Positions 17,044 through 39,401 of a stretch of DNA of 64,000 nt are shown here, piece after piece (position 1 is the first letter of the stretch; the number at the start of each line of letters is the position of its first letter). The notes beneath the pieces were generated by a model that saw only the letters and a program-made list of their open reading frames with translations, made no database searches and was not told the DNA's origin. The position numbers and the translations under genes were made by a program. Source of the stretch: Convolutriloba macropyga (Eukaryota); the NCBI RefSeq assembly GCF_964194025.1, contig NC_134471.1, positions 27,900,001-27,964,000 of the forward strand, in the 5' to 3' direction.

Positions 17044-17887
17044 TGTTACGCACTGATTTTTACGTGTTCCTCATGGTGTTTTCTGAGGTTAATATTGGAG
17101 GTAATTAACTTTTATAATCAGCATTTTACAAGGACTTATTTAGATGTTTCACAGTGCGATTCTTAGCAGATATATTTTGAATAAATTTAGCTAGTGATAG
17201 CCTTTTATTGAGCGGTTCGGATGTGCGATATATCCACTAGTTTGCCTTGTGTTCCAGAGTTTTAATCGTTTGCAATTATGCTCTTAGGAAGCCTGATCTA
17301 ACTTAGTAATTTTTAAAGATTTATCCAGTTCAATCTTTAATTATTTCAGCAAAAACTAATAACGAGAAGTTTTCTAGTTCTATCAAAGTTTTCCAAGATA
17401 TTAATCAACTGATTATCAGGCTGGTTCTCCGGTGTTCTGCTGATCGTAAGTTCCGCAGGACTGTGCCTCGAGTACTATTGGTCCTTCGCAAATATTTACT
17501 GATCTATAAGTTGGGCAATTTCCGGCTTTTGTACGTCTCTTGATGTTTGTTAAGTACATATACAAGTTCCGTATTAGCACCTACTTTATCAGAATAATTA
17601 CTTCACCAAGTACATAATCTCATGAAGTTATTTACTAATTATGCGAATTTATCTTCAAGAAACTCAAAAAAGTAAATATTGAGTCTTTTAGGCACTTGAT
17701 AAATTTATCAATAAACTGTCAATCTGCGGTTGTTTTTCATAAACATAAACAAATTAGGGGTTACAGGCCTAGATGGAAATACTAGCTGTATATGGCCTTG
17801 AAACTAAATGAATATTATAGCAATTATTTATGGATATTTTAAGGAATATCATCACGTAACTATGAGGGACGAAATAGGGGCGTGACA
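17044..17887 (-). repeat. 3' LTR (844 bp)
   Basis: TGTTACGC...GCGTGACA. By eye about 23 substitutions and 2 indels versus 39420-40272 (~97% identity). Confidence 0.95.
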
Positions 17888-17900
17888 CTCCCGGACTTTA
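17888..17900 (-). other. Putative (imperfect) polypurine tract
   Basis: Minus-strand AAAGTCCGGGAG directly abuts the 3' LTR; purine-rich but interrupted. Confidence 0.45.
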
Positions 17901-18451
17901 TGAAAATTTTCCATGAAAATTTTGAGAAGGAACTGGGGTTTTACAAATTTTCTATAAAACATATAATCTGCACGAGTATGAGGATATACATATGTTTTTG
18001 TTGGAGCCACCCAATTTATGTTTTCTTAGAAAAGAGTTTTTGAACGAAAGCATTTAAGTGAAAAACAATTAAGGAAGTTAAGAGAAATGAAGTTGAGATA
18101 AGGTTATAATGAAGAGGATTAAGACAAGATTAAAAGCTTTGAAGGAACATTAAGGATGTTGAAGATGCGCTATTTCAGAAGGAAAGCATGAGACATAAGT
18201 TAAAGTTAAGGTTAAGAGAAGACATTGAATTAGCACTGAAAATAATCACGCTTATTTCGTTAAATAATGGCTCTAATCTTTGAGAAGGAGTAGAAGAAGG
18301 ATACTGGTTGAATGAATGCTTTAAAGCACTGGTTAATTTCTGGGATTGAAGCACTGGTTTGATGATTTAAATCACTTAGAACCAAAACTTAATGGATGAA
18401 GGGATACTTAATCAGTTAAGGGATTAATACTTGTTGAACTATATAAGACTT

Positions 18452-20545
18452 TCAAGAGCTGAAAGTATACTTTCCTCTCGGGGTTGAGCTTGGTTTTCTA
18501 GTTCATCGTCTTTGTTGAATCGGCCCATGGTGTTGAGTGACATGGTAGAAGTTGCAGGCATGGAATTTCGTCGTTGTCGTTTTAGGGTTCCAAGTTCTTC
18601 TGGAGAGATGACTGTTGGCGGTTGCTTGAGGTGTTTGGCTAGATTTGTAACGACATCTGCTTTCAGATGTTTTGGTACTGAAACTACTGGATTAAGCGGT
18701 ACATTGTTCCGTTTCCGTTAAGCTTCATGAAATTTGGCACCATTTGTCGTACAAAGGCTACTTTATGGTATAAATACATGAAGAGGATATGTAAGGCTAA
18801 GTTTCCAATAAAGACAATGATTGTCAGCGAGAGAGAAAGCTTGATTGGCACGTAAGATTCAAGTTTGTCAATTAGTGCTGGCTTGAATGATTTCATTTCA
18901 GTGGTAATGGGCTTTGCTATGTCGTCTAATGATTCTGTTGATAACTTTCGATTGGAATAAATGAATTCTGTTTTGACTTTTTTCAGTAAATCAAGGCTGG
19001 CATCAGTGCTTGTTTCGTATTTTGGTAGCTCGTTTATGTTTGGAACTAAGTCAATTAATTGTTCTAGTGGATCAGGCAATTTAACATTGATTCTCTTTGC
19101 TGGAAGGTACTGACAACTTTGTAAATCAGCTCTGATATTAATGTGATCACTGAACATTGTGTGTCCACATTTTAATGTCATTAAACAGATGTTACAACCT
19201 TTATGGGGAATGTTGGTCTGTCGGCCATTCTCGTCCGTACCAATCTCACTAAGAGTAAAATCACTTGAAGCTGATGTAAGTAGCCATATTTCGTATCCAA
19301 GGTTCTGTGCTCGTTCGTGGTTGGGTAACACAACCTTCTCTGTGTCACATACTTTCAATGCTGTAATGGCATGATGAAACTTGAGGGTTGCTAGGTACGA
19401 GGAGAATCCAAGGTGAGTTTCCACTGTCTCATCACAGATTCGGTATCGTGGCGATCCTAGACAGTTATCATACTGAGCTCTCGTCAGTACTGTAGTTTCC
19501 ATCTGTCCTTCTGAGATTGGCTGTCCTTCTGAGTTCTCTCCCTCTATCACCCATCGTAAAGCGTCTACAGAGTCCTTCTGGGGCATAGGGATTACAATTG
19601 CACGATAAATTTCAAACACTGTCTGGCTAGAGGCTATGGGAATGGCTAGTGTCAGTAAAAGACCGTCTTCTACTGTTGAAATCTCTTGTACGAGTTTCGC
19701 ATCGTAATACGAAAGTATGTCAGTCATGGGAATTGCCAAAGTTAGACGATCTGGTGCGTTCTTTTGGCTATCATGGACTGCGTCAAGGATCTTTATCAAC
19801 GATTTTCGGGGTACTAAAGAGATTGGAAGGCGTTTGTCAAGTAAAGTAGGAATTGCATTTATAACATTAATTCGGAAAGAATGTAAGGCTGCTCAATAAC
19901 TTCTAATATCTGCATAAAGTGTAAGAAGTAAGGATGCTGCTGTGTCAAATTTAAAGTTCAGTTGTTGTTGTGTTGCTTGAATTTCCATGCAAGTTGCTAT
20001 TGCGTTCAGATTATGGTCTACAATTGCGAATTGTTCCTCAACTAGTTTCCAGTTTCTGTGCTGGTTTTCTTGCATTTCTTTTTGAACTTTATAAACCTTT
20101 GGAAGTTCGTCAGCAACTAGAAAGAATTTCTCATCGGTTTGTGCGCCGATTTCCATGACATAGTCGTTAAGGCTATTAAAACTGTTAGCTAGTCTATCGA
20201 TATTTTCAGCATTTTGAGACGTTCGTTGGCATGAGCCGAAAATTCCTGTGGTTCCACCGCATCCTCCGCTGCTCATTGCTATTCCTGGACCGAAGAGTCC
20301 AATTCCAGCGACTGCGGCTGCCCTAGCAAGCGGGGCGGCTCTTTTCTGTCTGTTTTGGGGGTCCTCTTCGACTCTGGTGAGGAGTTTTTCGGTCTCATTG
20401 CGTAGTTTAAAGACTTCAAGTTCGGCTTCGATACGTGGTACTGTAAGTCATGTTGCAAAATTCTGACTGTGTTATCCATTTCTTTGAGAGTTCAAGAAGT
20501 AGAGTCTCTACTTGTTGTCGTATCGTGAAACTGTAACGAGGAATG
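18452..20545 (-). pseudogene. env: env: class I fusion glycoprotein (F-like/errantivirus-like), with stops and frameshifts, N-terminus deleted
   Basis: Furin site RQKR at 20351-20340 is followed by the fusion-peptide-like AAPLARAAAVAGIGLFGPG, a heptad-like helix, a Cys-rich ectodomain and the TM segment LSLTIIVFIGNLALHILFMYLY. The cytoplasmic tail continues after a frameshift to TGA at 18452. No signal peptide is visible upstream of PRYSFT (~20543). Confidence 0.88.
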
Positions 20546-20715
20546 TTTATGTGGTGTTTATTTGTTTCAGGTGTACTCTGCTTTTATATCATGTGTGTTT
20601 GTGTGTGTGTTTATTGATATTACTACTAAATATGGTTTTTGAACATGTTGAAGAGTAGTTCTTCGATTGAATGGTGGGAGTGTGATTATGGGGATAGTGG
20701 TTGGGGGGTCTAATT

Positions 20716-21114
20716 ATGCAGTCTTTATGCAGTGTTTTTTCGCGTTTTTCAGATTATTCTGATATCAATATGTGCTTTAATATTACTGTCGGCCGGAATA
20801 ATATCACTCTGGGATGCTGCAACAACGGGACCAGGTATGTGTCAAGGAACTGGGTTCACTGGTCACGTTTAGTTCACCCAGAGTGCAATATTACTAATAG
20901 TACAGTAATAGTTAATAGTATAGAAGATGGAGGAGATGGTTGGGACGGGGACTCAATATTGTTATTATTATTCATATTATTATTCATATTATTCGGGATT
21001 GTTGGGATGTGGAGAAGAATGAGGGGAAGATGTGTGGGAAGAAGGAGGGGGAGGGAAGAGATTGAAGATCAGGAAGATGAGGGAGGAGTTGAAATGGAGG
21101 AGACGGCAGTATAA
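20716..21114 (+). CDS. Antisense accessory ORF of the LTR element: small single-pass membrane glycoprotein (copy 1)
   Basis: Five N-x-S/T sequons and four Cys in ~60 aa, then the hydrophobic ILLLLFILLFILFGIVGMW, an Arg cluster, an acidic tail and C-terminal ETAV. The start codon is uncertain. Confidence 0.6.
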   Translation: MQSLCSVFSRFSDYSDINMCFNITVGRNNITLGCCNNGTRYVSRNWVHWSRLVHPECNITNSTVIVNSIEDGGDGWDGDSILLLLFILLFILFGIVGMWRRMRGRCVGRRRGREEIEDQEDEGGVEMEETAV

Positions 21115-24100
21115 CTATTTATTTATTTTTATTTATATAACTTATTAACTGACTTGTAGTTGTAGTATGGATTAGTTCTCCTTAATATACTGACTACTAT
21201 ACTTGGTGCTATTAATATTTAATAAGGTGCTACTAATATCATAGTAATTAGTATATATCAAACTTGTTTTGTGGGGAAGATTGAAGACGTAAGTAGGGGA
21301 TAAAAGACAATTAGTGAAACTTTGAGAATAAGTAAATGTCAATGATAGTAGTGACGATGATAGTAGTGTCAATGATAGTAGTGCTTTTCTGCGTTGTCTG
21401 GTGCGTGTGTTAACAGATAGTGCCTAACTTCTCAAGGTGAGAAGGGTGAGCCAATGGAAATTAACTAGTTTCAGTTCAATTGTTTTGATTATCATGTAAT
21501 GTACTTTCAGTTATGGGCAAGTTTTTCGGAGATATCTTCGGATTGCAACAATTATGTTTGGTTTTTACTGGTGGAACTATTAACTGTGAAGCATGTGAGC
21601 ATGTATTAATGTTTTTGTGGCAGTGTGTAGCTATATAATGACATATTTGTGAGAGTGCAAGAATGGTGCTATAGTGACTTTTTTCATTTTTGAGCATCAA
21701 CTTAACTTCACTTGTGAAATACTGGTTATAAACTGGTTCTAATGGTTCTAGGTACTTGTCCTGGTTGTTAGCAGCACTTGGTAGACATCGGTGGGGAACA
21801 ACTATGCTATAAATTCAGGTTTTAGGGAACTTTTTTGGGCAACTTTTTATTCATGTTTGAGAAAACGAAAAATGCGAAAATTTGGGGGCCCCAGCGTCAC
21901 TCAATTTTTAAATTGCTCCAATCGGGCTCAAAATTCGCAGATCGCATCAGTGGCTCAGAAAACGCTGCAGCGCAAAAATTTGGCGCAATTTGAGCATTTT
22001 TCGCAAAGTTATGACTATTTTCGTAATCTGAACCTGGCTATTTTTGAATTATGAAATTTCGGGCTGAGTAAGTCGTCACTGTTCATACATTATAGGTATT
22101 GAATGGTTAAAATGGTACTGTCTATGCTTGGTACTAATGAATATTACTGAATTATAGGTTTTGAAGCTATTTATCGGGTCAGAACATTGATTTTTGAGTC
22201 CAAAATGCTAATTTTCAGGCGTGATTTTTCCACTATTCAAGGTTCTGCAAGACATGTGTCTGTCTGGTGATGCTCTAGTGACCTAAATCGGGTGCTAACT
22301 GTTAGTACTGATATCTGTGGCTATCAGGGGTAGCTTTTTGGTAGCTCTGGAAGTGATTAACTTGTGTTTTGTTCCAGTTTTTTTGTAGAATTTGATAGAT
22401 TTTTACTTGAGGTGGGTCATGTTTGTTGCATAAGTTGACATAGGTTGGAGATGATTGATTTTTGACGGTAACTGAGGGTCATACTAGTGAGTAATAATTT
22501 GGTGGCAGCTATTGGTGCAGTTTGATGCATGATTTGAGGTCATTGTGTTGAGTTTTTCATATTAGAATTTTGGACTAAATTTGGTCAAAGATGTGCAGAT
22601 TTCGATTTGTTCACTCTTTTCAACATTTTTGCATTTCTGTGGGATTGTATCAATTTATTAGGCTTGGAAAACTACTAGAGAGGTTGAGTAATGGATATGG
22701 GCTCATATGTCGTTTATTTTGTACTATTTTTCTGGTCTAATTCTGGTTCTGTTTTGACGAATTTGAGAAGAGTCTGGTAGGCTTCAGTATTTTGCTATTA
22801 TTTCACTATTTTACAAAATTTTACACTATTTTTAATATGAGCGTGTAGAGCTTGAGCATACGGATGTTTTAAGCTAATAATATCGGCTTTTAGATCAATA
22901 TTTTGGATTTTATTAACATGTACGTAAATTTTCAAAAAGTCTCCAAAATTGAGGACCCCAGCGTCAACCAATTTTGAAAATGCTTTGATTAAGCTCATAA
23001 TTGGTGAATCGCTTTATCGGCTCAAAAAACCCTGCAGCGCAAAAATTGAGGCGGTTTAAACTATTTTTTCACGAGTTATAACGTTTTTGCTGCAGTGAAC
23101 CTGGGTTTTTTGAAAAAGCTCAGATAGGGGATAGGTTATTGGCTATGAGGCTATGAAGAACTTGTTCAAAATGATTGATATTGCTATGGTTGTACTGCTC
23201 ATGAGTAGGGCTAAATTAACAATAATATTGGGCATATTTGAGTATTAAGATGCATTTTTGGTCACTTTTTTTGGAAATCACACTCAATTTTTTAATTTTC
23301 GTTACTTTGGCAGTCTTTTCTCAACTTGTATTGGCACTAGGGGGCTGGGAGTGCATATTCTAAGAGATATAGGTGTGGGTGTGCTTAATTGCTGTCAGAA
23401 GTTAATAGTTTTGACTTTAGTGGGAAATAACTATTTTTTCTGACAAAGTTGTGGCAATTTCAGAGCTTATTCGGGTTTAAGTCTTCATGGTTGATACTGG
23501 GATAAGCTGGCACTGGTTTTTATGGTACTACAAGGCTAGTGGGGGGTTGCACTAGGGTTGTAGGGGGTATAGGTGAATTTAATCGGGTCAGGTGGGGAAT
23601 ACAATGATAAAATTTTTTAAGCGGTGGATTGAAGCAGAAGCGCAATTTTTGTTTTTTTTTTCGCCATTTTTCAACATATACTTGGCAATATTGGGTTTTT
23701 ATGGCTGTTTGAGGTTTTTCCATGCGGGTGGCAGCTGGGAGTAGCTGCTGGAGGCATTTGAAACAGTTTTTGACATATTTTTGGGGTATAATTTACACTA
23801 CTTTTTAATCAATTTTAACACACTTTGGTAGGGTTCGGCATTTTTGTCATAACTCAACTTTTATTGATTTTTGACGGGATTTTTGGGTACTGGGACGTCA
23901 AGCGTGAGCAGTAGGATGGTCTAGGGCTCTAAAATAGGTCAATTGGGGGTTTTTTGTAGGAGTTATAATTGAATTCGTGCGGATTCGAAAAGTGCCAAAA
24001 ATCGGGGGCTCCAGCGTCACTCGATTTTTTAAGTTCTTCAAATCGCTTCAAAATTTGCATATCGGTTCCTCGGCTTGAAAAATGCTGCAGCGCAAAAGTT

Positions 24101-24236
24101 TGGAATGATCGGGGCATTTTTCACAATTTTATGACTGTTTTTCTGAGTGTTTAAACATGTTGAAGTGTAGTTCTTCGATTGAATGGTGGGTGTGTGATGA
24201 TGGGGATAGTGGTTGGGGGGGGGGGGGGGTCTAATT

Positions 24237-24671
24237 ATGCATTCTTTACATGCTTTTTCGCGTTTTTCAGATTATTCTGCTATCAATATGTGCTTTAACA
24301 TTACTGTCGGCCCGAATAATATCACTCTGGGATGCTGCAACAACGGGACCAGGTATGTGTCAAGGAACTGGGTTCACTGGTCAAGTTTAGTTCACCCAGA
24401 GTGCAATAATACTAATAGTACAGTAATAGTTAATAGTATAGAAGATGGAGGAGATGGTTGGGACGGGGACTCAATATTATTATTATTATTCATATTATTA
24501 TTCATATTATTCGTGGAGAGATTGTTGGGATGTGGAGAGATTATTCGTGGAGAGATTGTTGGGATTTGGAGAAGAAGGAGGGGAAGATGTGTGAGAAGAA
24601 GGAGGGGGAGGGAAGAGATTGAAGATCAGGAAGATGAGGGAGGAGTTGAAATGGAGGAGACGGCAGTATAA
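24237..24671 (+). CDS. Antisense membrane glycoprotein ORF (copy 2, with an in-frame repeat insertion at the TM end)
   Basis: Duplicate of 20716-21114. The frame is kept despite indels. Confidence 0.5.
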   Translation: MHSLHAFSRFSDYSAINMCFNITVGPNNITLGCCNNGTRYVSRNWVHWSSLVHPECNNTNSTVIVNSIEDGGDGWDGDSILLLLFILLFILFVERLLGCGEIIRGEIVGIWRRRRGRCVRRRRGREEIEDQEDEGGVEMEETAV

Positions 24672-27600
24672 CTATTTATTTATTTTTATTTATATAACTT
24701 ATTAACTGACTTGTAGTTGTAGTATGGATTAGTTCTCCTTAATATACTGACTACTATACTTGGTGCTATTAATATTTAATAAGGTGCTACTAATATCATA
24801 GTAATTAGTATATATCAAACTTGTTTTGTGGGGAAGATTGAGGACGTAAGTAGGGGATAAAAGACAATTAGTGAGACTTTGAGAATAAGTAAATGTCAAT
24901 GATTGTAGTGACGATGATAGTAGTGTCAATGATAGTAGTGCTTTTCTGCGTTGTCTGGTGCGTGTGTTAACAGATAGTGCCTAACTTTTCAAGGTGAGAA
25001 GGGTGCGCCAATGGAAATTAACTAGTTTCAGTTCAATTGTTTTGATTATCATGTAATGTACTCTCAGTTATGGGCAAGTTTTTCAGAGATATCTTCGGAT
25101 TGCAACAACTATGTTTGGTTTTTACTGGTGGAACTAGTAACTGTGAAGCATGTGAGCATGTGGTAGTTTTTTGTTGCATTGTGTAGCTTTATAATGACAT
25201 ATTTGTGAGAGTGCAAGAATGCTGATATAGTGACTTTTTTTCATTTTTGAGCATTAACTTAACTTTACTTGCGAAATACTGGTTATAAACTGTTTCCAAT
25301 GGTTCTAGGTACTTGTCCTGCTTGTTAGCAGCGCTTGTGTGTAATTTGAACTGGTTTGGAAGAGTATTTGGTACTAATTTCCACATGTAATTTTTTCGTA
25401 ATTTAGGTCATTTTTCCACATCAGGACTGGTGTTGCATATGTGAATTTTTCAAATTTTATTGAACTTTGGGCAAATTGTTTGGTTTGGCCCACTTGGTAG
25501 ACATCGGTGGGGAACAACTATGCTATAAATTCAGGTTTTAGGGAACTTTTTTGGGCAACTTTCTATTCATGTTTGAGAAAACGAAAAATGCAAAAATTTG
25601 GGGGCCCCAGCGTCACTCAATTTTTAAATTGCTTCAATCGGGCTCAAAACTGGCAGATCGCATCAGTGGCTCAGAAAACGCTGCAGCGCAAAAATTTGGC
25701 GCAATTTGAGCATTTTTCGCAAAGTTATGACTATTTTTGTAATCTGAACCTGGCTATTTTTGAATTATGAAATTTCGGGCTGAGTAAGTCGTCACTGTTC
25801 ATACATTATCGGTATTGAATGGTTAAAATGGTACTGTCTATGCTTGGTACTAATAAATATTACTGAATTATAGGTTTTGAAGCTATTTATCGGGTCAGAA
25901 CATTGATTTTTTAGTCCAAAATGCAAATTTTCAGGCGTGATTTTTCCACTATTCAAGGTTCTGCAAGACATGTCTGTCTGGTGATGCTCTGGTGACCTAA
26001 ATTGGGTGCTACTGTTAGTACTGATATCTGTGGCTATCAGGGGTAGCATTTTGGTTGCTTTGGAAGTGATTAACATGTGTTTTGTTCCAGTTTTTTTGTA
26101 GAATTTGCTAGATTTTTACTTGAGGGGCGTCATGTTTGTTGCATAAGTTGACATAGGTTGGAGATGATTGATTTTTGACGGTAACTGAGGGTCATACTAG
26201 TGAGTAATATTTTGGTGGCAGCTATTGGTGCAGTTTGATGCATGATTTGAGGTCATTGTGTTGAGTTTTTCATATTAGAATTTTGGACTAAATTTGGTCA
26301 AAGATGTGCAGATTTCGATTTGTTCACTTTTTTCAACATTTATGCATTTCTTTGAGATTTTATCAATTTATTAGGCTTGGAAAACTACTAGAGAGACTGA
26401 GTAATGGATATGGGCTAATAAGTCGGTTACGAATTTGAGAAGAGTCTGGTAGGCTTCAGTATTTCGCTATTATTTCAACATTTTACTTAACAATTTTCAA
26501 TCTTTTTAATATGAGCGTGTAGAGCTTGAGCATACGGATGTTTTAAGCTAATAATTTTGGGTTTTAGGTCAATATTTTGGATTTTATGAACATGTACGTA
26601 AATTTTCAAAAAGTCTCCAAAATTGAGGACCCCAGCGTCAACCAATTTTGAAAATGCTTTGATTGAGCTCATAATTGGTGAATCGCTTTATCGGCTCAAA
26701 AAACCCTGCAGCGCAAAAATTGGGGCGGTTTAAACTATTTTTTCACGAGTTATAACGTTTTTGCTGCAGTGAACCTGGGTTTTTTGAAAAAGCTCAGATA
26801 GGGGATAGGTTATTGGCTATGAGGCTATGAAGAACTTGTTCAAAATGATTGATATTGCTATGGTTGTACTGCTCATGAGTAGGGCTAAATTAACAATAAT
26901 ATTGGGCATATTTGAGTATTAAGATGCTTTTTTGGTCACTTTTTTTTGGAAATCACACTCAATTTTTTAATTTTCGTTACTTTGGCAGTCTTTTCTCCAC
27001 TTGTATTGGCACTAGGGGGCTGGGAGTGCATATTCTAAGAGATATAGGTGTGGGTGTGCTTAATTGCTGTCAGAAGTTAATAGTTTTGACTTTAGTGGGA
27101 AATAACTATTTTTTCTGACAAAGTTGTGGCAATTTCAGAGCTTATTCGGGTTTAGGTCTTCATGGTTGATACTGGGATAAGCTGGCACTGGTTTTTATGG
27201 TACTACAAGGCTAGTGGGGGGTTGCACTAGGGTTGTAGGGGGTATAGGTGAATTTAATCGGGTCAGGTGGGGAATAAAATGATAAAAATTTTTAAGACGT
27301 TGATTGAAGCAGAAGCGCAATTTTTGTTTTTTCGTCATTTTTCGACATATACTTGGCAATTTTGGGTTTTTATGGTTATTTGAGGTTGTACCATGCGGGT
27401 GGCAGCTGGGAGTAGCTGCTGGAAGCATTTGGAACAGATTTTGACATATTTTTGGGGTATAATTTACACTACATTTTAATCAATTTTAACACACTTTGGT
27501 AGGGTTCGGCATTTTTGTCATAACTCAACTTCTATTGATTTTTGACGGGATTTTTGGGTACTGGGACGTCAAGCGTGAGCAGTAGGATCGTTTAGGGCTA

Positions 27601-28112
27601 TAAAGTAGGTCAATTGGGGTTTTTTGTAGGAGTTATAATTGAATTCGTGCGGATTCGAAAAGTGCCCAAAATCGGGGGCTCCAGCGTCACTCGATTTTTT
27701 AAGTTTTTCAAATCGCTTCAAAATTTGCATGTCGGTTCCTCGGCTTGAAAAATGCTGCAGCGCAAAAGTTTGGAATGATCGGGGCATTTTTCACAATTTC
27801 ATGACTGTTTTTCTGAGGTGAACCTAGGATTTTTGGAAAGGTCAATTTTAGGCTAAGATTTTGGTACTTAGAACGGGTCAAAAGGGGTCAGTTATAGCTG
27901 GAATTGCTTCTACTGGATGAGGGCTGTTCAGGACAGTAGGATAATCCAGGTTCGGACCAGTAGTTCTGGAGATATATCAAAATAACTAGGATTTAAGGTC
28001 GAAATTTTTCGAATTTTGGGCGATTTTTGGGCTTTAGGGCTAAGTTGCTCAGGCTTGTTGGGCTTTTGGGGCAATTAGATGGTACTGCTGGACTGTACTG
28101 GGTCTGTACATG

Positions 28113-28535
28113 CTAATGGATGTAGATGGTTATGGGTAGAGGGTCAAAGACTTGACGTATAAGTTCAAAAATGATGTTAAAATCTAATTTATCATAGCCA
28201 CTGGCGAGTTTTGGAAGACTTAAGTGTGAAATTCCTGCATCTATTACTATTTCTCTTAGTTCATAAAGACTTGCTAATACAGATTCGTATGTGGGTTTGT
28301 GGTAGTATCTGAATTTGGTAACTAATTTGAAGATATAACGCTCAAAATAGGGGTCAAAATATATTAAAACAGCCAATATTCGGTGGGTATCTAAGTCTGA
28401 TTGCACTTGGGGCTGCTGGGTACCAGCTTTTGACTTGTCTGGCTAATGCCTTTGCCATTGCAAGGTCTGCTGATATACAGAGTGCAAAAGAGTGTCGAGA
28501 GTGTAAGATATCTGTTGGTGAACTAAGATAAGTTG
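28113..28535 (-). pseudogene. TARG1/OARD1-like macrodomain, duplicated copy (2-bp deletion near 28370)
   Basis: SFALCISADLAMAKALA...RYIFKLVTK..YHKPTYESV..SL..L.....GISHLSLPKLASGYDKLDF matches the TARG1 pattern HCISED.RMGAGIA / YYLITK / KPTY / LSMPRIGCGLD.L.W. Confidence 0.88.
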
Positions 28536-31075
28536 CATTGATTTCTTGTCTAAAGTGATTTAAGTTTTGGTTTGATGAGCCTGGTGAAGAGTTTTTTGTT
28601 TGAGATCTGGTTACTGGTTTGTTTGCTGAACTGCTGTGCTTTTTCCCTGAATATTTGGCTATACTAGCTCTAACTTGATCTAATTTTGTCTCTCTACTTG
28701 GTGTATTTGTCTGTTTTGATGTTTGTGCTGATGCTTTTGTTGCTTCACGTTTTTCTTCTTGCTCCAATCTAGTTCGTGCATTTTTCGGTCTAGGACTGCC
28801 TGATCTTCTAACTTGGTTGCTTAGATAAGAGTTTGTTCTATCTTCTTCATGCAACATTATTTGTCTATGTAATTTAAATCCGCGTACATTTTTCCGCTGT
28901 TGGTAGTCTAGTGGTTTGAATGCACTTTTCTCTGGTTTTCGTTTAGGATTATAAGGTCGGGCTCTAATCTTCCTGTCAGTTAATGCGAATTGTTCTTCAT
29001 GTTATTCTGGAGGCGATTCAATGTCGAATGGTACTATTGATGGCTGAGGTTGTTGAGCTGGTAGGAACATTTCATCATCTGATGAGGATGATACTAGAGG
29101 AACACGATTTTCTGGTTCTTGCTGTCGAATTTCATCAGCAATTAGTGGATCAACCGGTATTCTTGCTATTTGTTGTGCATCTAGGTTCAGGTCAGCTAGA
29201 TTTTCATCTGAACTGCTATTCTCATCAAATAAGTTTGGAATTGCTTCATCTGAGCTTGAAGAATCAAATACTGGAAGATGGACTGGTGCTGTTCGTGGTC
29301 TAACTGCTGGTGCTACTACCCTTGGTGGGGCCAGTGGCACTGCTGGAGATGCTGCTGCTGGTCAAAGATGTGCAGATTTCGATTTTTTCACTTTTTTCAA
29401 CATTTATGCATTTCTGTGAGATGTGTATCAATTTATTAGGCTTGGAAAACTACTAGAGAGACTGAGTAATGGATATGGGCTCATAAGTCGGTTATTTTGT
29501 ACTATTTTCTGGTCTAATTCTGGTTCTATTTTGACGAATTTGACAAGAGTCTGGTAGGCTTCAGTATTTTGCTATTATTTCAACATTTTACTAAACAATT
29601 TTCAATATTTTTGATATGAGCGTGTAGCTTGAGCATACGGATGTTTTAAGCTAATTATATCGGGTTTTAGATCAATATTTTGGATTTTATGAACATATAC
29701 GTAAATTTTCAAACAGTCCCCAAAATTGAGGGCCCCAGGGTCAGTCAATTTTGAAAATGCTTTGATTGAGCTCAAAATTGGTGAATCGCTTTATCGGCTC
29801 AAAAACCCTGCAGCGCAAAAATTTGGGCGGTTTTAACTATTAGGCTATGAAGAACTTGTTCAAAATGATTGATATTGCTATGGTTGAACTGCTCATGAGT
29901 AGGGCTAACTGAATTAACAATAATATTGGGCATATTTGAGTATTAAGATGCATTTTTGGTCACTTTTTTTGGAAATCACACTCAATTTTTTGTAATTTTC
30001 GTTACTTTGGCAGTCTTTTCTCAACTTGTATTGGCACTAGGGGGCTGGGAGTGCATATTCCAAGAGATATAGGTGTGGGTGTGCTTAATTGCTGTCAGAA
30101 GTTAATAGTTTTGACTTTAGTGGGAAATAACTATTTTTTCTGACAAAATTGTGGCAATTTCAGAGCTTATTTGGGTTTAAGTCTTCATGGTTGATACTGA
30201 ATTGAGCTGGGACTGGTTTTTATGGTACTACAAGGCTAGTGGGGGGTTGCACTAGGGTTGTAGGGGGTATAGGTGGCTTTAATCGGGTCAGGTGGGGAAT
30301 AAAATGACAAAAATTTTTAAGCGGTGGATTGAAGAAGCACATTTTTTGTTTTTTTTTCGTTATTTTTCAACATATACTTGGCGATATTGGGTTTTTATGG
30401 TTGTTTGAGGTTGTGCCATGCGGGTGGCAGCTGGGAGTAGCTGCTGGAGGCATTTGGAACAGTTTTTGACATATTTTTGGGGTATAATTTACACTACATT
30501 TTAATCAATTTTAACACACTTCGGTAGGGTTCGGCATTTTTGTCATAACTCAACTTTTATTAATTTTTGACGGGATTTTTGGGTACTGCGACGTCAAGCG
30601 TGAGCAGTAGGATGGTCTGGGGCTATAAAATAGGTCAATTAGGGGTTTTTTGTAGGAGTTATAATTGAATTCGTGCGGATTCGAAAAGTGCCAAAAATCG
30701 GGGGCTCCAGCGTCACTCGATTTTTTAAGTTCTTCTTAAGTTTGGAATGATCGGGGCATTTTTCACAATTTTATGACTGTTTTTCTGAGGTGAACCTAGG
30801 ATTTTTGGAAAGGTCAATTTTATCCTAAGTTTTTGGTACTTAGAACGGGTCAAAAGGGGTCAATTATAGCTGGAATTGTTTTTACTGGATGAGGGCTGTT
30901 CAGAACAGTAGGTTAATCCACGTTCGGACAAGTAGTTCTGGAGATATATCAAAATAACTAGGATTTAAGGTCGAAATTTTTCGAATTTTGGGCAATTTTT
31001 GGGCTTTAGGGCTAAGTTGCTCAGGCTTTTGGGGCAATTAGATGGTACTGCTGGACTGTACTGGGTCTGTACATG

Positions 31076-31500
31076 CTAATGGATGTAAATGGTTATGGGT
31101 AGAGGGTCAAAGACTTGTCGTATAAGCTCAAAAATGATGTTAAAATCTAATTTGTCATAGCCACTGGCGAGTTTTGGAAGACTTAAGTGTGAAATTCCTG
31201 CATCTATTACTATTTCTCTCAGTTCATAAAGACTTGCTAATACAGATTCGTTTGTGGGTTTGTGGTAGTATCTGAAATTGGTAACTAAACTGAAGATATA
31301 ACGCTCAAAATAGGGGTCAAAATATATTAAAACTGAGCCAATATTCGGTGGCTATCTAAGTCTGATTGCACTTGGGGCTGCTGGGTACCAGCTTTTGACT
31401 TGTCTGGCTAATCCCTTTGCCATTGCAAAGTCTGCTGATATACAGAGTGCAAAAGAGTGCGGAGAGTGTAAGATATCTGTTGGTGAACTAAGATATGTTG
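31076..31500 (-). pseudogene. TARG1/OARD1-like macrodomain at the Pol C-terminus (premature TAG at 31352)
   Basis: Same motifs as the other copy. It follows integrase and a Pro/Ala/Ser-rich linker, and the frame continues past the TAG as PPNIGSVLIYFD. Confidence 0.88.
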
Positions 31501-34500
31501 CATTGATTTCTTGACTAAAGTGATTTAAGTTTTGGTTTGATGAGCCTGGTGAAGAGTTTTTTGTTTGAGATCTGGTTACTGGTTTGTTTGCTGAACTGCT
31601 GTGCTTTTTCCCTGAATATTTTGCTATACTAGCTCTAACTTGATCTAATTTTGTCTCTCTACTTGGTGTTTTTGACTGTTTTGATGCTTGTGCTGATGCT
31701 TTTATTGCTTCACGTTTTTCTTCTTGCTCCAATCTAGTTCGTGCATTTTTCGGTCTAGGACTGCCTGATCTTCTAACTTGGTTGGTTAGATAAGGGTTTC
31801 TTCTATCTTCTTCTTGCAACATTATTTGTCTATCTAATTTAAATCCGCGTACATTTTTCCGCTGTTGGTAGTCTAGTGGTTTGAATGCACTTTTCTCTGG
31901 TTTTTGTTTAGGATTATAAGGTCGGGCTCTTTTCTTCCTGTCAGTTAATGCAAATTGTTCTTCATGTTATTCTGGAGGCGATTCAATGTCGAATGGTACT
32001 ATTGATGGCTGAGGTTGTTGAGCTGGTAGGAACATTTCAGCATCTGATGAGGATGATACTAGATGAACACGATTTTCTGGTTCTTGCTGTCGAATTTCAT
32101 CAGCAATTAGTGGATCAACCGGTATTCTTGCTAATTGTTAAGCATCTAGGTTCAGGTCAGCTAGATGTTCTTCTGAACTGCTATTCTCATCAAATAAGTT
32201 TGGAATTGCTTCATCTGAGCTTGAAGAATCAAATACTGGAAGATGGACTGGTGCTGTTCGTGGTCTAACTGCTGGTGCTGCTACCCTTGGTGGGGCCAGT
32301 GGTACTGCTGGAGGTGCTGCTGCTGCAGGTCCTGTTGCTTGTCCACCTAGGGGGACGTTTATGGTCACTCTGACTGGGTCTGGTTTCACTTTCTTAGACT
32401 GTTGTAACTCGTTTTCTTGTTCATATATCACATCTGGGATATGTTTATCAAATAGATCAGGTTCCATGTGTTGCCGTCTTGATAGATCAGGTTGAAAATT
32501 TACAGGATTAATTACTTCAAGGCCTTCAGGGGTTTCACTTGGCTTAACTGGTTTCAATCTGATACGGTGAACACATTGTGTGTAATTCGTGTTTACTTTT
32601 CGAATGATGTAATTAGAGTCAGTAAGGACTTTTTCCACTTTATACAGCGGTAGCACTTTCTGAACTTGAGAAGCTATTACTGTTGATTGTTCTAATAGCT
32701 TGGGATTCACAAGTAAACAGAATGATTTCTCCGGAATGGGTTTTGCTGATGCTTTTTGGTCATAATACTTTTCATACACTTCAAGTATGCAGTCGTTAGT
32801 TTTTCTTTGTTTTCTCCGATCTTTTGCATCATGGCATCTTGCAGTTCATTTACAAAATCAGAATTTACTGTTACTGCATTCATTACTTCTCTGGAGAACC
32901 TAATGTCAAGGGATTTTATTGGTTCTCTGCCATGGAATAAAGTTGAAGGGCAACAATTTGTCGCTGAATGATAAGAAGTATTATGAATGAATGTTGCTAA
33001 TGCAACATATTTATGCCAATCTTTCCATTGTTCCTCAGTATTGAGCTTAAATATTCGTTTCAGTGGTCCGTGAGATCGTTCTATTGCTCCAATGGTCTGA
33101 GGGTTCTTTAGTGAGGCATGTTTTAACTTTACTTCTAGTAAACTTGCTCATTCTGACATTAATTCCGAAGTAAAATTTGTTCCTAAGTCACTAAGTATCG
33201 TTTGAGGAATGTAGCTATGTTGAAAGAACACCACTACTAATTCTCGGGCTACTGTGTCAGCATATCCATTTGTTAGTGGGACTGCAAATAGATGCTTTGT
33301 GAAAACATCTATTCGACTCAAAACATACTTAAATTGCGAGGACTTTAGTGGGCCTACTAAGTCAATTTGGAGCATATCTCCTGGATATGATTGTAGTGAA
33401 CTAACTGGTTGCAATTTTGTGTAATGTGGCTTTTCGGAACTCTGTTTAATTGGAGACAAGTCAGGCAGTTTTTAATGAAACTAATGAAGTGTTCAGTGAA
33501 ACCGGGGTAATAGAATCGCTTTCTAAATTCTTGAATTGTTGCTTTTGGGCCTAAATGACATGTTTGTGAATTATGGAGCCTATATATAGTCTCTTTCCAC
33601 AAATGCTTAGGTACACAGAATTGTTTATGAAGTACTTTTCCAGTATCATCATAAAAATTCCGGTATAAGACATTCCCTTCAAGAATTAATCTATTTAAAT
33701 GTTTGTGATACTTTTTTAAGTTGGTTGAAGCATACTTTAAGTCTGGTTGTTGATTGTTTTGTTGAATCCAGCTTATTACTGTACTAATGTCTGCATCCTT
33801 TTGCTGCTCTTCTGCTAAGTTAAGGCTAATTAAGTTGTCTGTAAGGTCTGGGAACTCATCTAATGGGTTTGGGTACTCAGTTGAATTTATTTCTTGCTTT
33901 CTTTTAAGTTTTAATAGACTTTGTATTTCTGTGACTGGTAAATTATTCTGTTTCTTTTTGTAATCGTCATAGACTCCGAGTTTTTTAAGGACGTCAAGTT
34001 CAGCACTATTAATTTCGTCATCGAAATTTTCAATATCAAATAACACATTTAGTTCAATGTCAGGATTCTGGGCTTCTGTGTCTATTTCTATTTCTCTAAC
34101 TGGAATTCTATCTGTTAACTTTAAAGACATTGTCGCTGTTTTATCGTTCTCCATTCTAGAGAGAAAATCTGCTGCGTAGTTAGCGCGTCCAGGAATGTGA
34201 GCAATTACTATGTTAAAGGCAAGTATTCTGTCTAAACAATTCCAAAGAGATGGCGGTATTACTTTTGACTGAAAGAATTGCGTAAGGCTTTTGTTGTCGT
34301 ATAATTACTTGTTTACTTGATCCCCAAATGTAGTGCAAAAAGTAATCCAGTGCATAGTACAAGGCTAGGAACTCTTTGTATTAAATTGAAAACTTTAATT
34401 GCGTTGCATTAAACAAATGCGATCCAAACGATACGGGAGCGTATGTTTTCTTTTCTTTCTTTCCAGTTTCGTTTACATAGTCTTCCACCATTAGTACAAG

Positions 34501-36860
34501 ACCTGCGCCGTGGTAACTAGCGTCACAAAGAATTACATACTGCAAGCCTGGTTTTGGCAATCGGAATGTTACATTTGTTGCTTCCATTAGATCCTTCTTT
34601 ATTACTTCTAATGCCTTTACATGTTCTTCTGTGGTTTCTATTACTGCATCCTTCTTCAGGAGCTTGTAAAATGACATTAGTTTTTCACCTAGTTTAGGGA
34701 TGTAATTTCTGAAGAATTGCGTGAAACCGATTAATCGCTTTACTTGCTTTGTTGTTTTCGGCATTTTGAATTTATCGAGAAATTTAGTTATTTTTGACTT
34801 TTCATGTGATATTCCTTCTGCACTGATGTTATTTCCAAGAAATTTCATTGTATCTGTTGCTATTTCACACTTTTCAGGTGACAATTTTAGTCCGGATTGA
34901 CGTATACAGATAAATATTTCTCGCAAAGAGGGTACCAATTGTTCAAAATTTGTTACTGCATTTCCACTATCATCTATAAACTGGGTACAATTTCCTGAGG
35001 CTAGGCATGGGTCCAAATAATGTCTAATGAAAGAGCTAAATCCAGTTACTGACTTATTCAGTCCTTGGGCAACGCATTTATAAGCATAATTTCTCGAAGC
35101 AAATTTAAATGCTAGCAGTTGCACTGATACATCGGCTGCCATTTGCACACAGTGATATACTTGAGAACAGTCAAGTTTTGTAAACAACTTTTTCCCGGCA
35201 AAGTAATTTATTGCATCATTCATGTTCGAAATTGGTAAAATTTGTATTCACATAATCGTTTTTCAGCAAATGATTTACTTTTCTCAAGTCTCTAGTCTAA
35301 GTCTTCCTGAATTTTTCCGTTGAGCGAAAAGCAGACTACTATATCTTGATTGAGACAAAGTTGTTATCAGTCCATAGTAATGCATTAATGCTAATTCTAC
35401 TTGCAACTCTATTCTCAGATGGACAGGCGTTGGAGGTCCTTCCTCATAAATTGGTATGCTTCTTTCTGGAGTTACCTTTATTTTTAAATCTGTATTATAT
35501 CCGACGTCAAATCTGTTTTGCAAAAATGTCACTGAATTCGACTAATAATTCGCCTACTACAGCTTTTTGCTCATAGTTAAGGGCCGATTTCTCCCACGGG
35601 AACTTGCTCAAAAAAGTGATTTTATCCTGATTATTACCCTTTGGATCTAATTTCTCCATTTCTTGCAGTTTGAGCAGTTGCTCAAATATTTCTCTCTGCA
35701 AGGGCGACAAATTTGTCGGATCTGGGCACGTTTCAGGCGTGGGGAACCACAATTTTTCATATTCTGGAGCCGGCTTTGCTGGTTGGGCCTTTCTTTTTGG
35801 CGTATCTGTGACTTGAATTAGTTGATTTATTTCTGTTAAATAATTTTCACTCATTTTTGCTACATTTATTAATTGAGGATCTACTTCTAACAACGTTTCA
35901 GCTTGATCTGATGTTAAGAATGAGAATTTGGCTATTTCTTTGCCTTTATTTATGGTAATTGGATGGTCAGTAATGTTGAGGACATAGATATAAAGAATAT
36001 TATTTTCAGCAACTTTACTTAAAGAGGATTTTAATATTACTTCGCTATCTTTTTCAAAGATTTCGTTTGGAATTATTACCCCACAAAGATCAGTGAATGA
36101 TTCTAGTTTGTCCTGAAGCTTGCATTCTAGTACTGCTTGTTGATTTGGTTGTAATACTTGCTCTTTCTGTGTATAAACTCCGAATTTTTTACGCTTTACT
36201 ACCCTTCTGGGTTGCTTTTCTGACTTTAATTCATTGATTTGCAGAGTTTGGTCAGGGAATTTAATGTAGCTTTGTCCTGCGCAGATGCTAACTTTATGTT
36301 TAACAAAGAATGGGTTGCCTAATATTACAGGAATTGTGACAATTAAAACAAGGAAATCTTCTGTGAATGTTTGTGTGCGCAATTTAAATGTAACTTTAAT
36401 TACTTTGTCAATTTTAACTATATTTCCGTTTGCCATTATCTAGATCCGGCTTTTCTATTTCTGTTATTGAATTGATAATTGTGTTAATAAGTTCCTTGTA
36501 AAACTCGCGGCTTATCACGTTTGCAAATGCTCCTGTATCAATTAGTGCGCGTCTTTCAAATTCTCCATTAAATTTAATTTTAACATAGGATAATGTTCGG
36601 CCTAAAAGCGGGACAATGCTATATAATTGTTGAATATGTGCTACTGGTTTTAGTGTGGGTTGAGGTACTTGTGTTGGGAGTTGCACAGATTTATTCACTT
36701 TATTTTTATTACTATTTCTTTTGCGTTTTCTACGCTTTTTGTTACTTTATAAACTGGTTCTATTACTTTATCTAAACTAGGACTAGACGTGCTTTCGTTA
36801 TAATAATTAACTGAGTTTTTATAATTTTCATTTTGTTTTTTAAAGTTGGGTGGCTTTATT
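31076..36860 (-). pseudogene. pol: pol polyprotein (PR, dUTPase-like insert, RT, RNase H, integrase, linker, macrodomain), multiple frameshifts
   Basis: PR RALIDTGA; RT KLDCSQ.YH, AQGL, QFIDD; RH ILCDASYHGAG and HIPG..N..AD.LSR; IN H..H...CLTC, QIDLVGP, LSDLGTNF. Confidence 0.95.
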
Positions 36861-36870
36861 AGTTTTTTTG
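36859..36870 (-). promoter_or_regulatory. Probable -1 ribosomal frameshift site at the gag-pol junction
   Basis: Minus-strand C AAAAAAAC TAA: an A-AAA-AAC slippery heptamer immediately before a stop, at the end of the Asn/Gln-rich gag tail. Confidence 0.55.
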
Positions 36871-38102
36871 TTGATGAAATGGGTAATTCATACTTCTCAT
36901 AGTTCTATTTTGAGGAATACTTGCACGATTAAACTGATTTGCTTGTTGACTAGTATATCGGTTTTGTGCTGGCGCTGGGCTATCATAAACTATTCCCTGT
37001 CGAAGAAGATTTGCAGGGGTATTTCCAGTAGGGAACCGATAAATTGGTCTATTAACATAAGCTGGATGAACAAATGGGGGGCTATTTGAAGGTTCAGTCC
37101 AATGATTCCGAGTTTGTGGCTGTTCATTATGATAAAATGGTCTAGGGGCATTAAATTGTGGTCTAAACTCTCGGTAATTATTAGCACGGGGGGCATACTG
37201 TTGCTGGGGCCGATAGTTTTGCTGAAATTGACGATAATTGGGCTGATATTGAGGGTAATTTGGTTGATAATTTTGATAATGCGGGCGAAAATTTTGTCTA
37301 TAACTTTGTCTGTAGACTTGTTGTGGGTAATTTGGTGTGAAAATGTTTACTGGGCCTTGTTCTGGTGGCTCATTTTTACTGCTATGCTCTGTTCAAGTTT
37401 TTGCTCAAGTTCTTTTTGATTATTTGAGATAACAGTTATTGCTTTTAACATTTTATCTGTATTTGATTCTGTTATTTCGTTAAATCCATCGTCAAAGTAC
37501 TCTTCTCTGTTACACATCTCCCTAATTGCAATTTGTTGGCTAGCTAAGGTGCATAATTGGTCAATTGTATCAGTATCTGGCCTTTCTAACAACTTAGGCT
37601 TAAGCCAGTTCGGCATAGACTTAATGAAGAAGCGCTTTATTTGTTCATTTTTCCTGTTTTCTGACATTTCAAGGGCAGATTCCCTTGCTGCTGTCTCTTT
37701 CAAATCTACGAGCCTCAGCATCACGTCCTCCTGCTGCCGCTACTACTATTTCGGGTGCTGGATATGCTTTATTTGCTTCTGTTCTCAACTTTACTAAGAC
37801 ATTTTTTACTGTATCAGTTTTTGGATCTCCAACTTTATTATTCTGATCTCTCTCAAGTCGTCTTGTGTGAATCTATTTCTTAGAGCTGTTATACTATCCG
37901 CAAAAACTAGTCTGGTAGCCTCTGGTAGGGTTAGAAAGTATCTTAATGCATCTCCTTTTAAATGTAATTGCAGAAAATTCGCTTGTTGGGCGGCTGCGAT
38001 TGCTGCAACTCCAATTGCACCTGTTATTAACTGTTCAAATTCGTTGAAATTGTCCGTTTCTGATCCAGAGAAGGGTGTGATGTTGATTTGCGCGTGTGAC
38101 AT
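36859..38102 (-). pseudogene. gag: gag (frameshifted)
   Basis: MSHAQINITPFSGSE...FLQLHLKGDALRYF...ALRNRF is a Gypsy capsid-like start, followed by FIKSMPNWLKPKLL and an N/Q-rich tail. It lies directly upstream of the protease. Confidence 0.85.
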
Positions 38103-38964: not shown

Positions 38965-39155
38965 TCATTTACTCACAATATCCTCGTTTGCAAATACCTT
39001 GTGTTGTTTTTGTGCGTTGTGACGGCTGTGGTTGAGTTTGTTCCAGTTGTTGTTCACTCAAGCACTTTTGAATTATTGTTGCATTTTGTCCACAAAGACA
39101 CAAACACAGTTTCCAACCATTCTTTCCTTTGTTGCTGCTTTCTGCGTTATCGTCT

Positions 39156-39361: not shown

Positions 39362-39401
39362 GAATTATTCGAAAATTTGGTCCGCTAAACTGGGAAACAG
39401 T

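What the first reader, a model, noticed from the sequence alone, without database searches (positions are those of the whole stretch)
21884..27830. ~145-bp cis module repeated every ~1.06 kb with exactly invariant internal spacing
Seen: three diverged module types per spacer (CCAGCGTCA at 21891, 22958 and 24011/27681), while the DNA between them shows no similarity I can detect. CTGCAGCGCAAAA lies at exactly +74, a TTAT(G/A)AC-like box at +118 and GAACCT at +139 (third type measured at 27681). There are no net indels, and phased A/T tracts lie between the boxes. The span is about one nucleosome, with the CTGCAG palindrome near the middle. Inference: selection on helical geometry, such as nucleosome positioning, a multi-protein DNA-binding or insulator site, or a packaging/export RNA element. 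Known parallel: gypsy carries a Su(Hw) insulator array, but of much shorter units.
Basis: partly seen in the sequence, partly recalled or inferred. Interest (0 to 1): 0.75.

Follow-up and report, generated by a model that had tools for sequence, protein, structure and literature searches.

The report
Conserved triple module inside a retroelement
A roughly 190-bp non-coding module with rigidly spaced short boxes is real and indel-free, but it is the conserved core of an old three-fold repeat between pol and env of a decayed 23-kb envelope-carrying LTR retroelement, so it is probably a cis-acting site of that element whose function is still unknown.

Summary
CCAGCGTCA, CTGCAGCGCAAAA (+74), TYATRAC (+118) and GAACCT (+139) sit at identical offsets in six intact copies, where chance expects none.

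The modules lie on the minus strand inside a 23.2-kb LTR retroelement (17044-40272). It has gag-pol, an extra macrodomain ORF and an F-type env-like gene. The modules occupy the non-coding stretch between the macrodomain ORF and env.

There are three old module types, 64-71% identical, with no net indels where about 12-16 are expected. Two young segmental duplications of about 3.5 and 3.0 kb, roughly as old as the LTR pair, raise the count to eight. Three of the eight are truncated or deleted.

The modules are not coding, match no Rfam family, and fold no better than shuffled sequence. Helical phasing of the A/T tracts is not supported. They are compositional islands (balanced G/C, normal CpG) in G-poor spacers.

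Best reading: a cis-acting composite binding site kept by selection while the lineage replicated. Whether it acts as DNA or RNA is unresolved. Interest is moderate. I did not fetch other proviral copies, because that step is barred.

The parts
17044..40272 (-). Whole LTR retroelement, 23,229 bp, flanked by a 5-bp target-site duplication (CCAAC)
   Evidence: LTR pair found by self-BLAST. TG..CA ends, target-site duplication, a TGG-starting stretch (possible primer-binding site) after the 5' LTR and a purine run before the 3' LTR.
39420..40272 (-). 5' LTR
   Evidence: 842 aligned bases against the 3' LTR, 24 substitutions (2.9%), 2 indel events.
17044..17887 (-). 3' LTR
32138..38102 (-). gag-pol region (protease, RT, RNase H, integrase). 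Broken: split over at least six ORF pieces, with both frameshifts and stops.
   Evidence: Pfam hits: RVT_1 8e-16, RT_RNaseH_2, Integrase_H2C2 2e-11, Integrase_p58_C and Asp_protease_2 (the last two below their Pfam cut-offs). 323 RT relatives found. Period-3 signal 4-5. Piece counts.
31079..31822 (-). Macrodomain (OARD1/TARG1-like) ORF next to pol, copy in Y'. Broken: at least one frameshift. In the same frame as the last pol ORF, with two in-frame stops between them.
   Evidence: 92% amino-acid identity to the Y copy. Strong period-3 signal.
28113..28857 (-). Macrodomain ORF, duplicated copy in Y. Broken: at least one frameshift.
   Evidence: A 97-aa piece matches human OARD1 chains (4j5q, 2eee) at E=1.2e-11, over residues 70-143 of 146.
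20635..32325 (-). Repeat-bearing interval between pol and env. Layout in + coordinates: X, M1, S1, M2, S2, M3 | X', M1, S1, M2, S2, M3 | Y | part of S1, M2, S2, M3 | Y'.
   Evidence: Self-BLAST and repeat families D1-D20.
20635..24147 (-). Large unit A, duplicate of unit B
   Evidence: Aligns to 24147-27817 with 2.8-4.1% substitutions.
24147..27817 (-). Large unit B
29359..32325 (-). Large unit C, duplicate of 26295-29359. Its high end runs into the tail of pol.
   Evidence: 3.4-5.1% substitutions.
21866..22055 (.). Module type 1, copy A1 (core -25..+165 around the anchor at 21891)
22933..23122 (.). Module type 2, copy A2
23986..24147 (.). Module type 3, copy A3, cut at about +136 by the A/B duplication junction
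25582..25771 (.). Module type 1, copy B1
26607..26796 (.). Module type 2, copy B2
27656..27845 (.). Module type 3, copy B3 (the intact type 3)
29711..29841 (.). Module type 2, copy C2. High-coordinate end lost, 1-nt deletion, anchor mutated.
30682..30810 (.). Module type 3, copy C3, with an internal deletion of about 56 bp
18450..20550 (-). env-like gene (F-type fusion glycoprotein family, C-terminal membrane anchor). Broken: about two frameshifts and at least one premature stop relative to 575-762-aa relatives.
   Evidence: 110 relatives found. Relative P0142 passes the Pfam Baculo_F cut-off (27.0 against 24.1 bits) and P0125 matches weakly. Coverage and break counts. Period-3 signal 8.8.

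Best explanation
What it is (shown): the module is the conserved core of an old three-fold direct repeat. It lies in a roughly 4.4-kb non-coding stretch between a macrodomain ORF at the end of pol and the env-like gene of an envelope-carrying Ty3/gypsy-type LTR retroelement on the minus strand. Two young segmental duplications (about 3.5 and 3.0 kb) turned three modules into eight in this decayed copy.

How it works (inferred): while the lineage was replicating, selection kept five short boxes and their exact spacing in all three paralogues. Everything else in each period diverged. That divergence also took the repeats below the identity at which reverse transcriptase deletes direct repeats. 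After integration the constraint lapsed, and the copies began to collect deletions.

I take the module to be a cis-acting composite binding site for several proteins. I favour it being read on double-stranded DNA, as an enhancer-like or boundary-like platform inside the provirus, rather than as a folded RNA. This preference rests on its strand-symmetric composition, a palindromic central box, rigid box spacing, and the lack of any folding or covariation signal.
For: Context: LTRs, target-site duplication, gag-pol, env-like gene and macrodomain ORF.

Constraint:
- Boxes lie at identical offsets in six copies of three types.
- No net indels are seen against 12-16 expected.
- The invariant 13-mer is longer than permutations give.
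- In the young copies, two of eight modules carry deletions and one is truncated. In other genomic copies, 4 of 9 carry indels. So the invariance is not mechanical.

Not coding: stops occur in all frames and substitutions show no 3-periodicity.

Spacers: they are non-coding (period-3 power 0.3-1.7, against 4-12 in the genes).

Compositional island: sense-strand G is 19-20% in modules against 11-12% in spacers. CpG observed/expected is 1.0-1.4 against 0.5. Even the variable module columns keep 23% G.

Belongs to the family: type-1 modules with the same flanks occur on at least eight other contigs.

Repeat stability: direct repeats under about 82% identity are deleted in less than 1% of reverse-transcription rounds, while long near-identical ones are deleted very often (PMC3187697). 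This fits three old repeats at 64-71% identity surviving, and places the near-identical large duplications (3-4% substitutions) at or after the last round.

DNA over RNA: folding z-scores are near zero and there is no Rfam hit. A/T and G/C are balanced within the module. The central box is a 6-10-bp palindrome.
Against: - No binding protein or motif could be tested; no motif library is on hand.
- Three independent sequences are too few for a covariation test, so an RNA role is not excluded.
- Between copies of the same type, the core is no better conserved than the adjoining 90 nt of spacer (54% against 50%, 81% against 79%, 77% against 80% pseudo-residue identity). This is what neutral decay after insertion would give, but it adds no support for constraint.
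- The sharp homology edge at +160 could be a recombination or duplication boundary rather than a functional edge.
- A 1-kb spacing between sites is unusual for cooperating DNA sites.
- I could not check whether intact, recently active copies carry exactly three modules, because fetching them is barred.
Confidence: 0.4

Rival explanations
1. RNA-level cis element on the sense (minus-strand) transcript. The module would be a protein-binding or weakly structured segment of the genomic RNA or env-intron RNA, acting in export, localisation, packaging or splice control, and repeated three times for additive effect.
For: The modules lie in the transcribed interior, upstream of env, in a stretch that an env splice would remove. 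This is inferred from errantivirus biology (PMC5408687, listed). They are the only segments of a G-poor transcript with enough G to pair. Sense-strand folding energy is -32 to -36 kcal/mol per 190 nt in modules, against mostly -10 to -25 in spacers. A closing stem is predicted in all three types. The invariant box reads as a T-run followed by CAG on the sense strand, which resembles a splice acceptor.
Against: Folding z-scores are 0.31, -0.08 and -0.19 on the sense strand. Few consensus pairs show compensatory change, and several pairs break without compensation. There is no Rfam family, even at E up to 10. The donor-like GT at +142 departs from the usual donor consensus (from my own knowledge, not tested). 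The acceptor-like site just upstream of the env start codon shows no likeness to the module.
Confidence: 0.2
2. No function. The pattern is a relic of an old triplication with uneven decay, patchy replacement of the spacers, or an old gene-conversion tract that refreshed only the core.
For: Internal tandem repeats are common in LTR retroelements (own knowledge; for example the 151-bp repeats in the rover 5' UTR, PMC12992720). Homology fades gradually on one side and stops sharply on the other, like a breakpoint. Core and flank are equally conserved between copies. The region is prone to duplication.
Against: Having no net indels in each of four box-to-box intervals across three lineages is very unlikely at the local neutral indel rate. 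This reading does not explain the balanced composition and normal CpG of the core, including its variable columns, within G-poor flanks. Conversion would give higher identity, not 64-71% identity with conserved blocks.
Confidence: 0.25
3. Three insertions of a short mobile element (SINE or MITE) into the retroelement's non-coding region.
For: The composition resembles the surrounding genome rather than the spacers. One edge is sharp.
Against: No target-site duplications or terminal inverted repeats bound the unit. There are no copies elsewhere in 64 kb of repeat-rich sequence. No tRNA or other small-RNA family matches. The copies share one orientation and near-equal spacing (1067/1053 bp). Weak in-register homology extends 225 bp beyond the core. 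All foreign hits carry the same flanks.
Confidence: 0.05
4. Nucleosome-positioning or bent-DNA element defined by helically phased A/T tracts.
For: A/T tracts sit at conserved positions in all three types. The core is about one nucleosome long.
Against: AA/TT power at 9.75-11 bp exceeds the 95th percentile of shuffles in one type only. The best periods are 12.5-13.75 bp. The most conserved blocks are G/C-containing boxes, not the tracts.
Confidence: 0.03

Closest known systems
Su(Hw) insulator array of Drosophila gypsy (own knowledge; no sequence compared)
   Same: A repeated non-coding cis element inside an envelope-carrying Ty3/gypsy retroelement, with short boxes separated by A/T-rich DNA.
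   Different: The gypsy array consists of about a dozen short sites within about 350 bp of the 5' untranslated region. Here there are three 190-bp composite modules 1 kb apart, between pol and env. No motif comparison was possible.
151-bp tandem repeats in the rover 5' UTR and other LTR/5'-UTR cis-regulatory repeats of insect endogenous retroviruses (PMC12992720)
   Same: Copy-number-variable repeats in non-coding parts of env-carrying retroelements, tied to cis-regulation.
   Different: Those repeats are adjacent, near-identical and lie in the 5' UTR. These are old (64-71% identical), separated by about 870 bp of unrelated G-poor sequence, and lie downstream of pol.
Retroviral RNA export elements such as the constitutive transport element of simian type-D retroviruses (own knowledge)
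   Same: A cis element of about 150-200 nt in the non-coding interior or 3' part of a retroelement that works better in several copies.
   Different: Those elements are defined by a stable, conserved fold. No such fold or covariation is detectable here, and there is no Rfam match.
Envelope-carrying Ty3/gypsy elements of invertebrates with F-type env (PMC13524379)
   Same: The host element has LTRs, gag-pol and an F-type env-like gene, and occurs in many similar copies.
   Different: That paper mentions neither tandem repeats nor a macrodomain (no occurrences). This family carries a macrodomain ORF and a multi-kb non-coding stretch between pol and env.

Membership tests
Envelope-carrying Ty3/gypsy LTR retroelement (errantivirus-like) | Two LTRs with TG..CA ends flanked by a target-site duplication | tested here: met
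   LTR pair with 2.9% substitutions and a 5-bp duplication CCAAC.
Envelope-carrying Ty3/gypsy LTR retroelement (errantivirus-like) | Domain order protease, RT, RNase H, integrase on one strand | tested here: met
   Pfam hits in that order on the minus strand.
Envelope-carrying Ty3/gypsy LTR retroelement (errantivirus-like) | env gene of the F-type fusion glycoprotein family downstream of pol | tested here: inconclusive
   The window's own pieces give no Pfam hit. One relative at about 54% identity passes the Baculo_F cut-off and another matches weakly. A C-terminal hydrophobic anchor is visible. No structure was predicted.
gypsy-type Su(Hw) insulator array | Cluster of many short sites within a few hundred bp of the 5' untranslated region | tested here: not met
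   The modules lie between pol and env, about 1 kb apart, three per element.
gypsy-type Su(Hw) insulator array | Match to the Su(Hw) binding motif | not testable with these tools
Structured cis-acting RNA (export, packaging or localisation element) | Fold more stable than composition predicts | tested here: not met
   Sense-strand z-scores are 0.31, -0.08 and -0.19. Only type 3 on the antisense strand reaches -2.4. Sliding windows give the same picture.
Structured cis-acting RNA (export, packaging or localisation element) | Compensatory base changes supporting a shared structure | tested here: inconclusive
   5 of 33 consensus pairs show compensatory change and several break. Only three independent sequences are available.
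Structured cis-acting RNA (export, packaging or localisation element) | Match to a curated RNA family | tested here: not met
   No Rfam match at gathering score; only chance-level hits at E up to 10. No tRNA.
Helically phased or nucleosome-positioning DNA | AA/TT periodicity near 10-10.5 bp | tested here: not met
   Above shuffles in one of three types.
Repeated protein-coding exon | Open frame shared by the copies, and third-position bias of substitutions | tested here: not met
   Stops in every frame in at least one type. Variable sites by codon phase are 26/32/29, P=0.73.
Short mobile element (SINE or MITE) insertions | Target-site duplications, defined ends, and copies elsewhere | tested here: not met
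   Foreign hits all share the retroelement flanks.
Plain tandem repeat without constraint | Whole periods align about equally well | tested here: not met
   Identity is 61-72% in the core, 38-57% in the 135-bp shoulder (-160 to -25), and at background (28%) elsewhere.

The most novel reading that the evidence does not exclude
The three modules are a long-maintained, selection-protected cis element of a previously undescribed lineage of invertebrate endogenous retroviruses. This lineage also carries an OARD1/TARG1-type macrodomain. The modules would act as a triple export/localisation signal or chromatin-boundary platform set in deliberately G-poor, unstructured spacers. The modules would also have been driven apart in sequence, down to their functional boxes, to escape deletion by reverse transcriptase.
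Probability: 0.2. Interest if true: 0.6.

Novelty: new variant of a known kind. Interest (0 to 1): 0.4.

Why it matters
Cis-acting signals of invertebrate envelope-carrying retroelements are known almost only from the LTR and 5' UTR of a few Drosophila elements. This case would be different: a rigid, triplicated module downstream of pol, kept through roughly ten times the divergence of the LTR pair. If real, it would point to an unrecognised step in the life cycle of these elements, or in the way the host handles them.

It is also a clean natural example of repeats surviving in a reverse-transcribing genome by diverging everywhere except at their functional boxes. The accompanying macrodomain ORF may be of more general interest, because macrodomains are known from RNA viruses as counter-defence against host ADP-ribosylation.

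Tried and rejected
- Coding exon: rejected. Stops occur in all frames and substitutions show no period-3 bias.
- Cassette model, with each spacer a decayed accessory ORF bounded by a module: rejected. The spacers have no period-3 signal and no Pfam or PDB hit.
- Small-RNA gene or captured host RNA: no Rfam or tRNA hit.
- Mini-intron inside the module (donor-like site at +142, acceptor-like site at +74, 69 nt): set aside. The donor is poor and the flanks show no coding signal.
- Copy of the env splice-acceptor region: no likeness.
- SINE or MITE: no target-site duplications or other copies.
- Helical phasing: weak.
- Dating the large duplications before or after integration: undecidable from divergence alone. 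A/B differ by 3.2%, B/C by 4.0% and the LTRs by 2.9%. The repeat-deletion literature argues they arose at or after the last reverse transcription.
- Host organism: not identified. All relatives are unnamed ENA proteins.
- Literature searches for a macrodomain in LTR retroelements, or for pol-env repeat arrays, found nothing relevant.
- One hit of the large protein search (P0268, 845 aa) is an unrelated coiled-coil protein, a chance match.
Full report
OBSERVATION

The pattern CCAGCGTCA-N65-CTGCAGCGCAAAA occurs six times on the + strand (21891, 22958, 24011, 25607, 26632, 27681). None occurred in shuffled sequence. The 13-mer alone occurs seven times, against 0.09 expected. TYATRAC at +118 and GAACCT at +139 are at the same offsets in all intact copies. 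A profile built from six copies finds eight copies, all between 21.8 and 30.9 kb and all in one orientation. It finds nothing else in the window.

Over a 190-bp core (-25..+165 from the anchor) the three types are 64-71% identical, and 103 of the 190 columns are invariant. The invariant runs of five or more bases start at offsets 0, +13, +74, +105 and +138. The 13-base run is longer than permutations give (P=0.02).

CONTEXT

The modules lie inside a 23.2-kb LTR retroelement on the minus strand (17044-40272). Its features are:
- 843- and 853-bp LTRs differing by 2.9% substitutions;
- TG..CA ends and a 5-bp target-site duplication;
- a TGG-starting stretch (a possible primer-binding site) after the 5' LTR and a purine run before the 3' LTR;
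- Pfam hits for protease, RT, RNase H and integrase, in that order, from 38.1 down to 32.1 kb;
- an env-like gene at about 18.45-20.55 kb.

The env-like gene has 110 relatives of up to 762 aa. One relative passes the Pfam Baculovirus-F cut-off and another matches weakly. The window's own copy ends in a hydrophobic anchor. The element therefore belongs with the envelope-carrying Ty3/gypsy elements now known across invertebrates (PMC13524379). The host could not be named, because every relative is an unnamed ENA protein.

All genes are broken in this copy:
- gag-pol is split over at least six ORF pieces, by both frameshifts and stops;
- env has about two frameshifts and at least one premature stop;
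- each copy of the extra ORF described below has at least one frameshift.

ANATOMY OF THE POL-ENV INTERVAL (20635-32325)

In + coordinates the interval reads: X, M1, S1, M2, S2, M3 (unit A) | X', M1, S1, M2, S2, M3 (unit B) | Y | part of S1, M2, S2, M3 | Y'.

Units A and B differ by 2.8-4.1% substitutions. The second duplication (26295-29359 against 29359-32325) differs by 3.4-5.1%. The LTRs differ by 2.9%. The large duplications are therefore about as old as the insertion.

Work on retroviral vectors shows that long, near-identical direct repeats are deleted at very high frequency in one round of reverse transcription. Repeats below about 82% identity are deleted in less than 1% of rounds (PMC3187697). 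By that analogy, the large duplications arose during or after the last round. The replicating form then carried one set: Y, M3, S2, M2, S1, M1, X in sense order, giving an element of roughly 16.6 kb.

Y and Y' carry the tail of pol and a further ORF with a strong coding signal (period-3 power 10-12). One piece of that ORF matches human OARD1/TARG1 macrodomain chains at E=1.2e-11.

THE SPACERS

The spacers show no coding periodicity (0.3-1.7, like the LTRs) and no Pfam or PDB match. On the sense strand they are G-poor (11-12% G, 23-26% C) with CpG observed/expected near 0.5. The LTRs and pol do not show this skew.

The modules are islands within this sequence: G 19-20%, C 19-23%, CpG observed/expected 1.0-1.4. 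Even their variable columns keep 23% G.

HOMOLOGY BETWEEN THE THREE PERIODS

Identity is 61-72% in the core. It falls to 38-57% over the next 135 bp on the low-coordinate side, and is still detectable, nearly in register, to about -250. On the other side it stops sharply at +160. Elsewhere it is at the 28% background. This is an old tandem triplication of which only one part is still recognisable. It is neither a plain triplication nor three unrelated insertions.

IS THE SPACING CONSTRAINED?

Young duplicates and the LTR pair give 31 indel events per 231 substitutions. At that ratio, 12-16 indels are expected among the three module types. None is seen net in any of the four box-to-box intervals (P about 1e-5 to 1e-7). 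Compensating small indels inside variable stretches cannot be excluded.

The invariance is not mechanical. Among the eight copies, A3 is truncated by a junction, C2 has lost an end and one base, and C3 has an internal deletion.

I did not fetch other proviral copies (see below). As a proxy, I searched with the chance 87-codon open frame that runs through the type-1 module on the + strand. Seven, and then two more, predicted "proteins" from other contigs are translations of type-1 modules with the same flanks. Four of those contigs match, by length, contigs that carry env or RT relatives. Four of the nine carry indels inside the module. So the module belongs to the family, and decaying copies do lose the spacing.

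Between copies of the same type, core and flank are equally conserved. That is expected if most divergence between copies is neutral decay after insertion. Only the paralogue comparison, which reflects evolution in the replicating lineage, shows the contrast.

WHAT IT IS NOT

- Not coding.
- Not a known RNA family or tRNA.
- Not a fold more stable than its composition predicts. Sense-strand z-scores are 0.31, -0.08 and -0.19; only type 3 on the antisense strand reaches -2.4. The sliding-window scan agrees.
- Little covariation.
- Not helically phased.
- Not bounded by target-site duplications.

MECHANISM

I commit to a cis-acting composite protein-binding site of the retroelement, kept by purifying selection while the lineage replicated. 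The three copies diverged everywhere except at the functional boxes, which also made them safe from repeat deletion.

I favour a reading on duplex DNA for three reasons: the strand-symmetric composition amid skewed flanks, the palindromic central box, and the rigid box spacing without any RNA signal. This is an argument by elimination, and I give it 0.4.

An RNA-level role (0.2) and no function at all (0.25) remain open.

COMPARISON AND NOVELTY

The closest known things are:
- the gypsy Su(Hw) array;
- the 5'-UTR repeats of insect endogenous retroviruses (PMC12992720);
- retroviral export elements.

This case differs from all of them in position, spacing, age and unit size. Membership of the RNA-element and insulator-array classes is not met, or not testable, on their defining features. 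I class it as a new variant of a known kind, of moderate interest.

Noticed in passing
window 28113-28857 (-) and 31079-31822 (-): An ORF directly downstream of, and in frame with, the end of pol encodes an OARD1/TARG1-type macrodomain (E=1.2e-11 to human OARD1 chains; Pfam did not detect it). It is present in two duplicated copies that are 92% identical, both broken. I found no paper describing a macrodomain in an LTR retroelement.
   Followed up: partly
window 27040-27250 (-), with equivalents in units A and C: Part of spacer S2 folds far better than shuffles on the sense strand (-36.2 kcal/mol, z=-5.5, 0 of 200 shuffles as good), with several inverted-repeat hairpins. This is the only strongly structured segment of the interval and lies outside the modules.
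   Followed up: partly
window 22194-22579 and 25910-26292: Spacer S1 holds a 19-nt inverted repeat (89% complementary) with arms about 345 nt apart. It could be the ends of a small nested foldback or MITE-like insert.
   Followed up: no
window 20635-32325, sense (minus) strand: The spacers X, S1 and S2 are strikingly G-poor and C/A-rich on the sense strand (G 11-12%). Neither the LTRs nor pol share this, so it is not a general mutational bias of the element. I have no explanation for it.
   Followed up: partly
window about 47400-64000: A long satellite-like array with a period of about 817 bp and higher-order structure. Copies are 88-92% identical in the right-hand part and older, 70-80% identical, on the left. 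GC content is higher (41-44%) than in the rest of the window.
   Followed up: no
window 40426-41156 and 39156-39361: Two perfectly identical tandem duplications: 2 x 366 bp about 150 bp outside the 5' LTR, and 2 x 103 bp in the element's 5' untranslated region. Identity of 100% in an otherwise decayed region suggests very recent events or assembly artefacts.
   Followed up: no
window 1-16000: The left part of the window is a patchwork of other repeats. It includes a weak reverse-transcriptase fragment at 7707-8528 (+), a 2 x 463-bp tandem at 8876-9803, and several dispersed repeat families shared with 40-49 kb.
   Followed up: no
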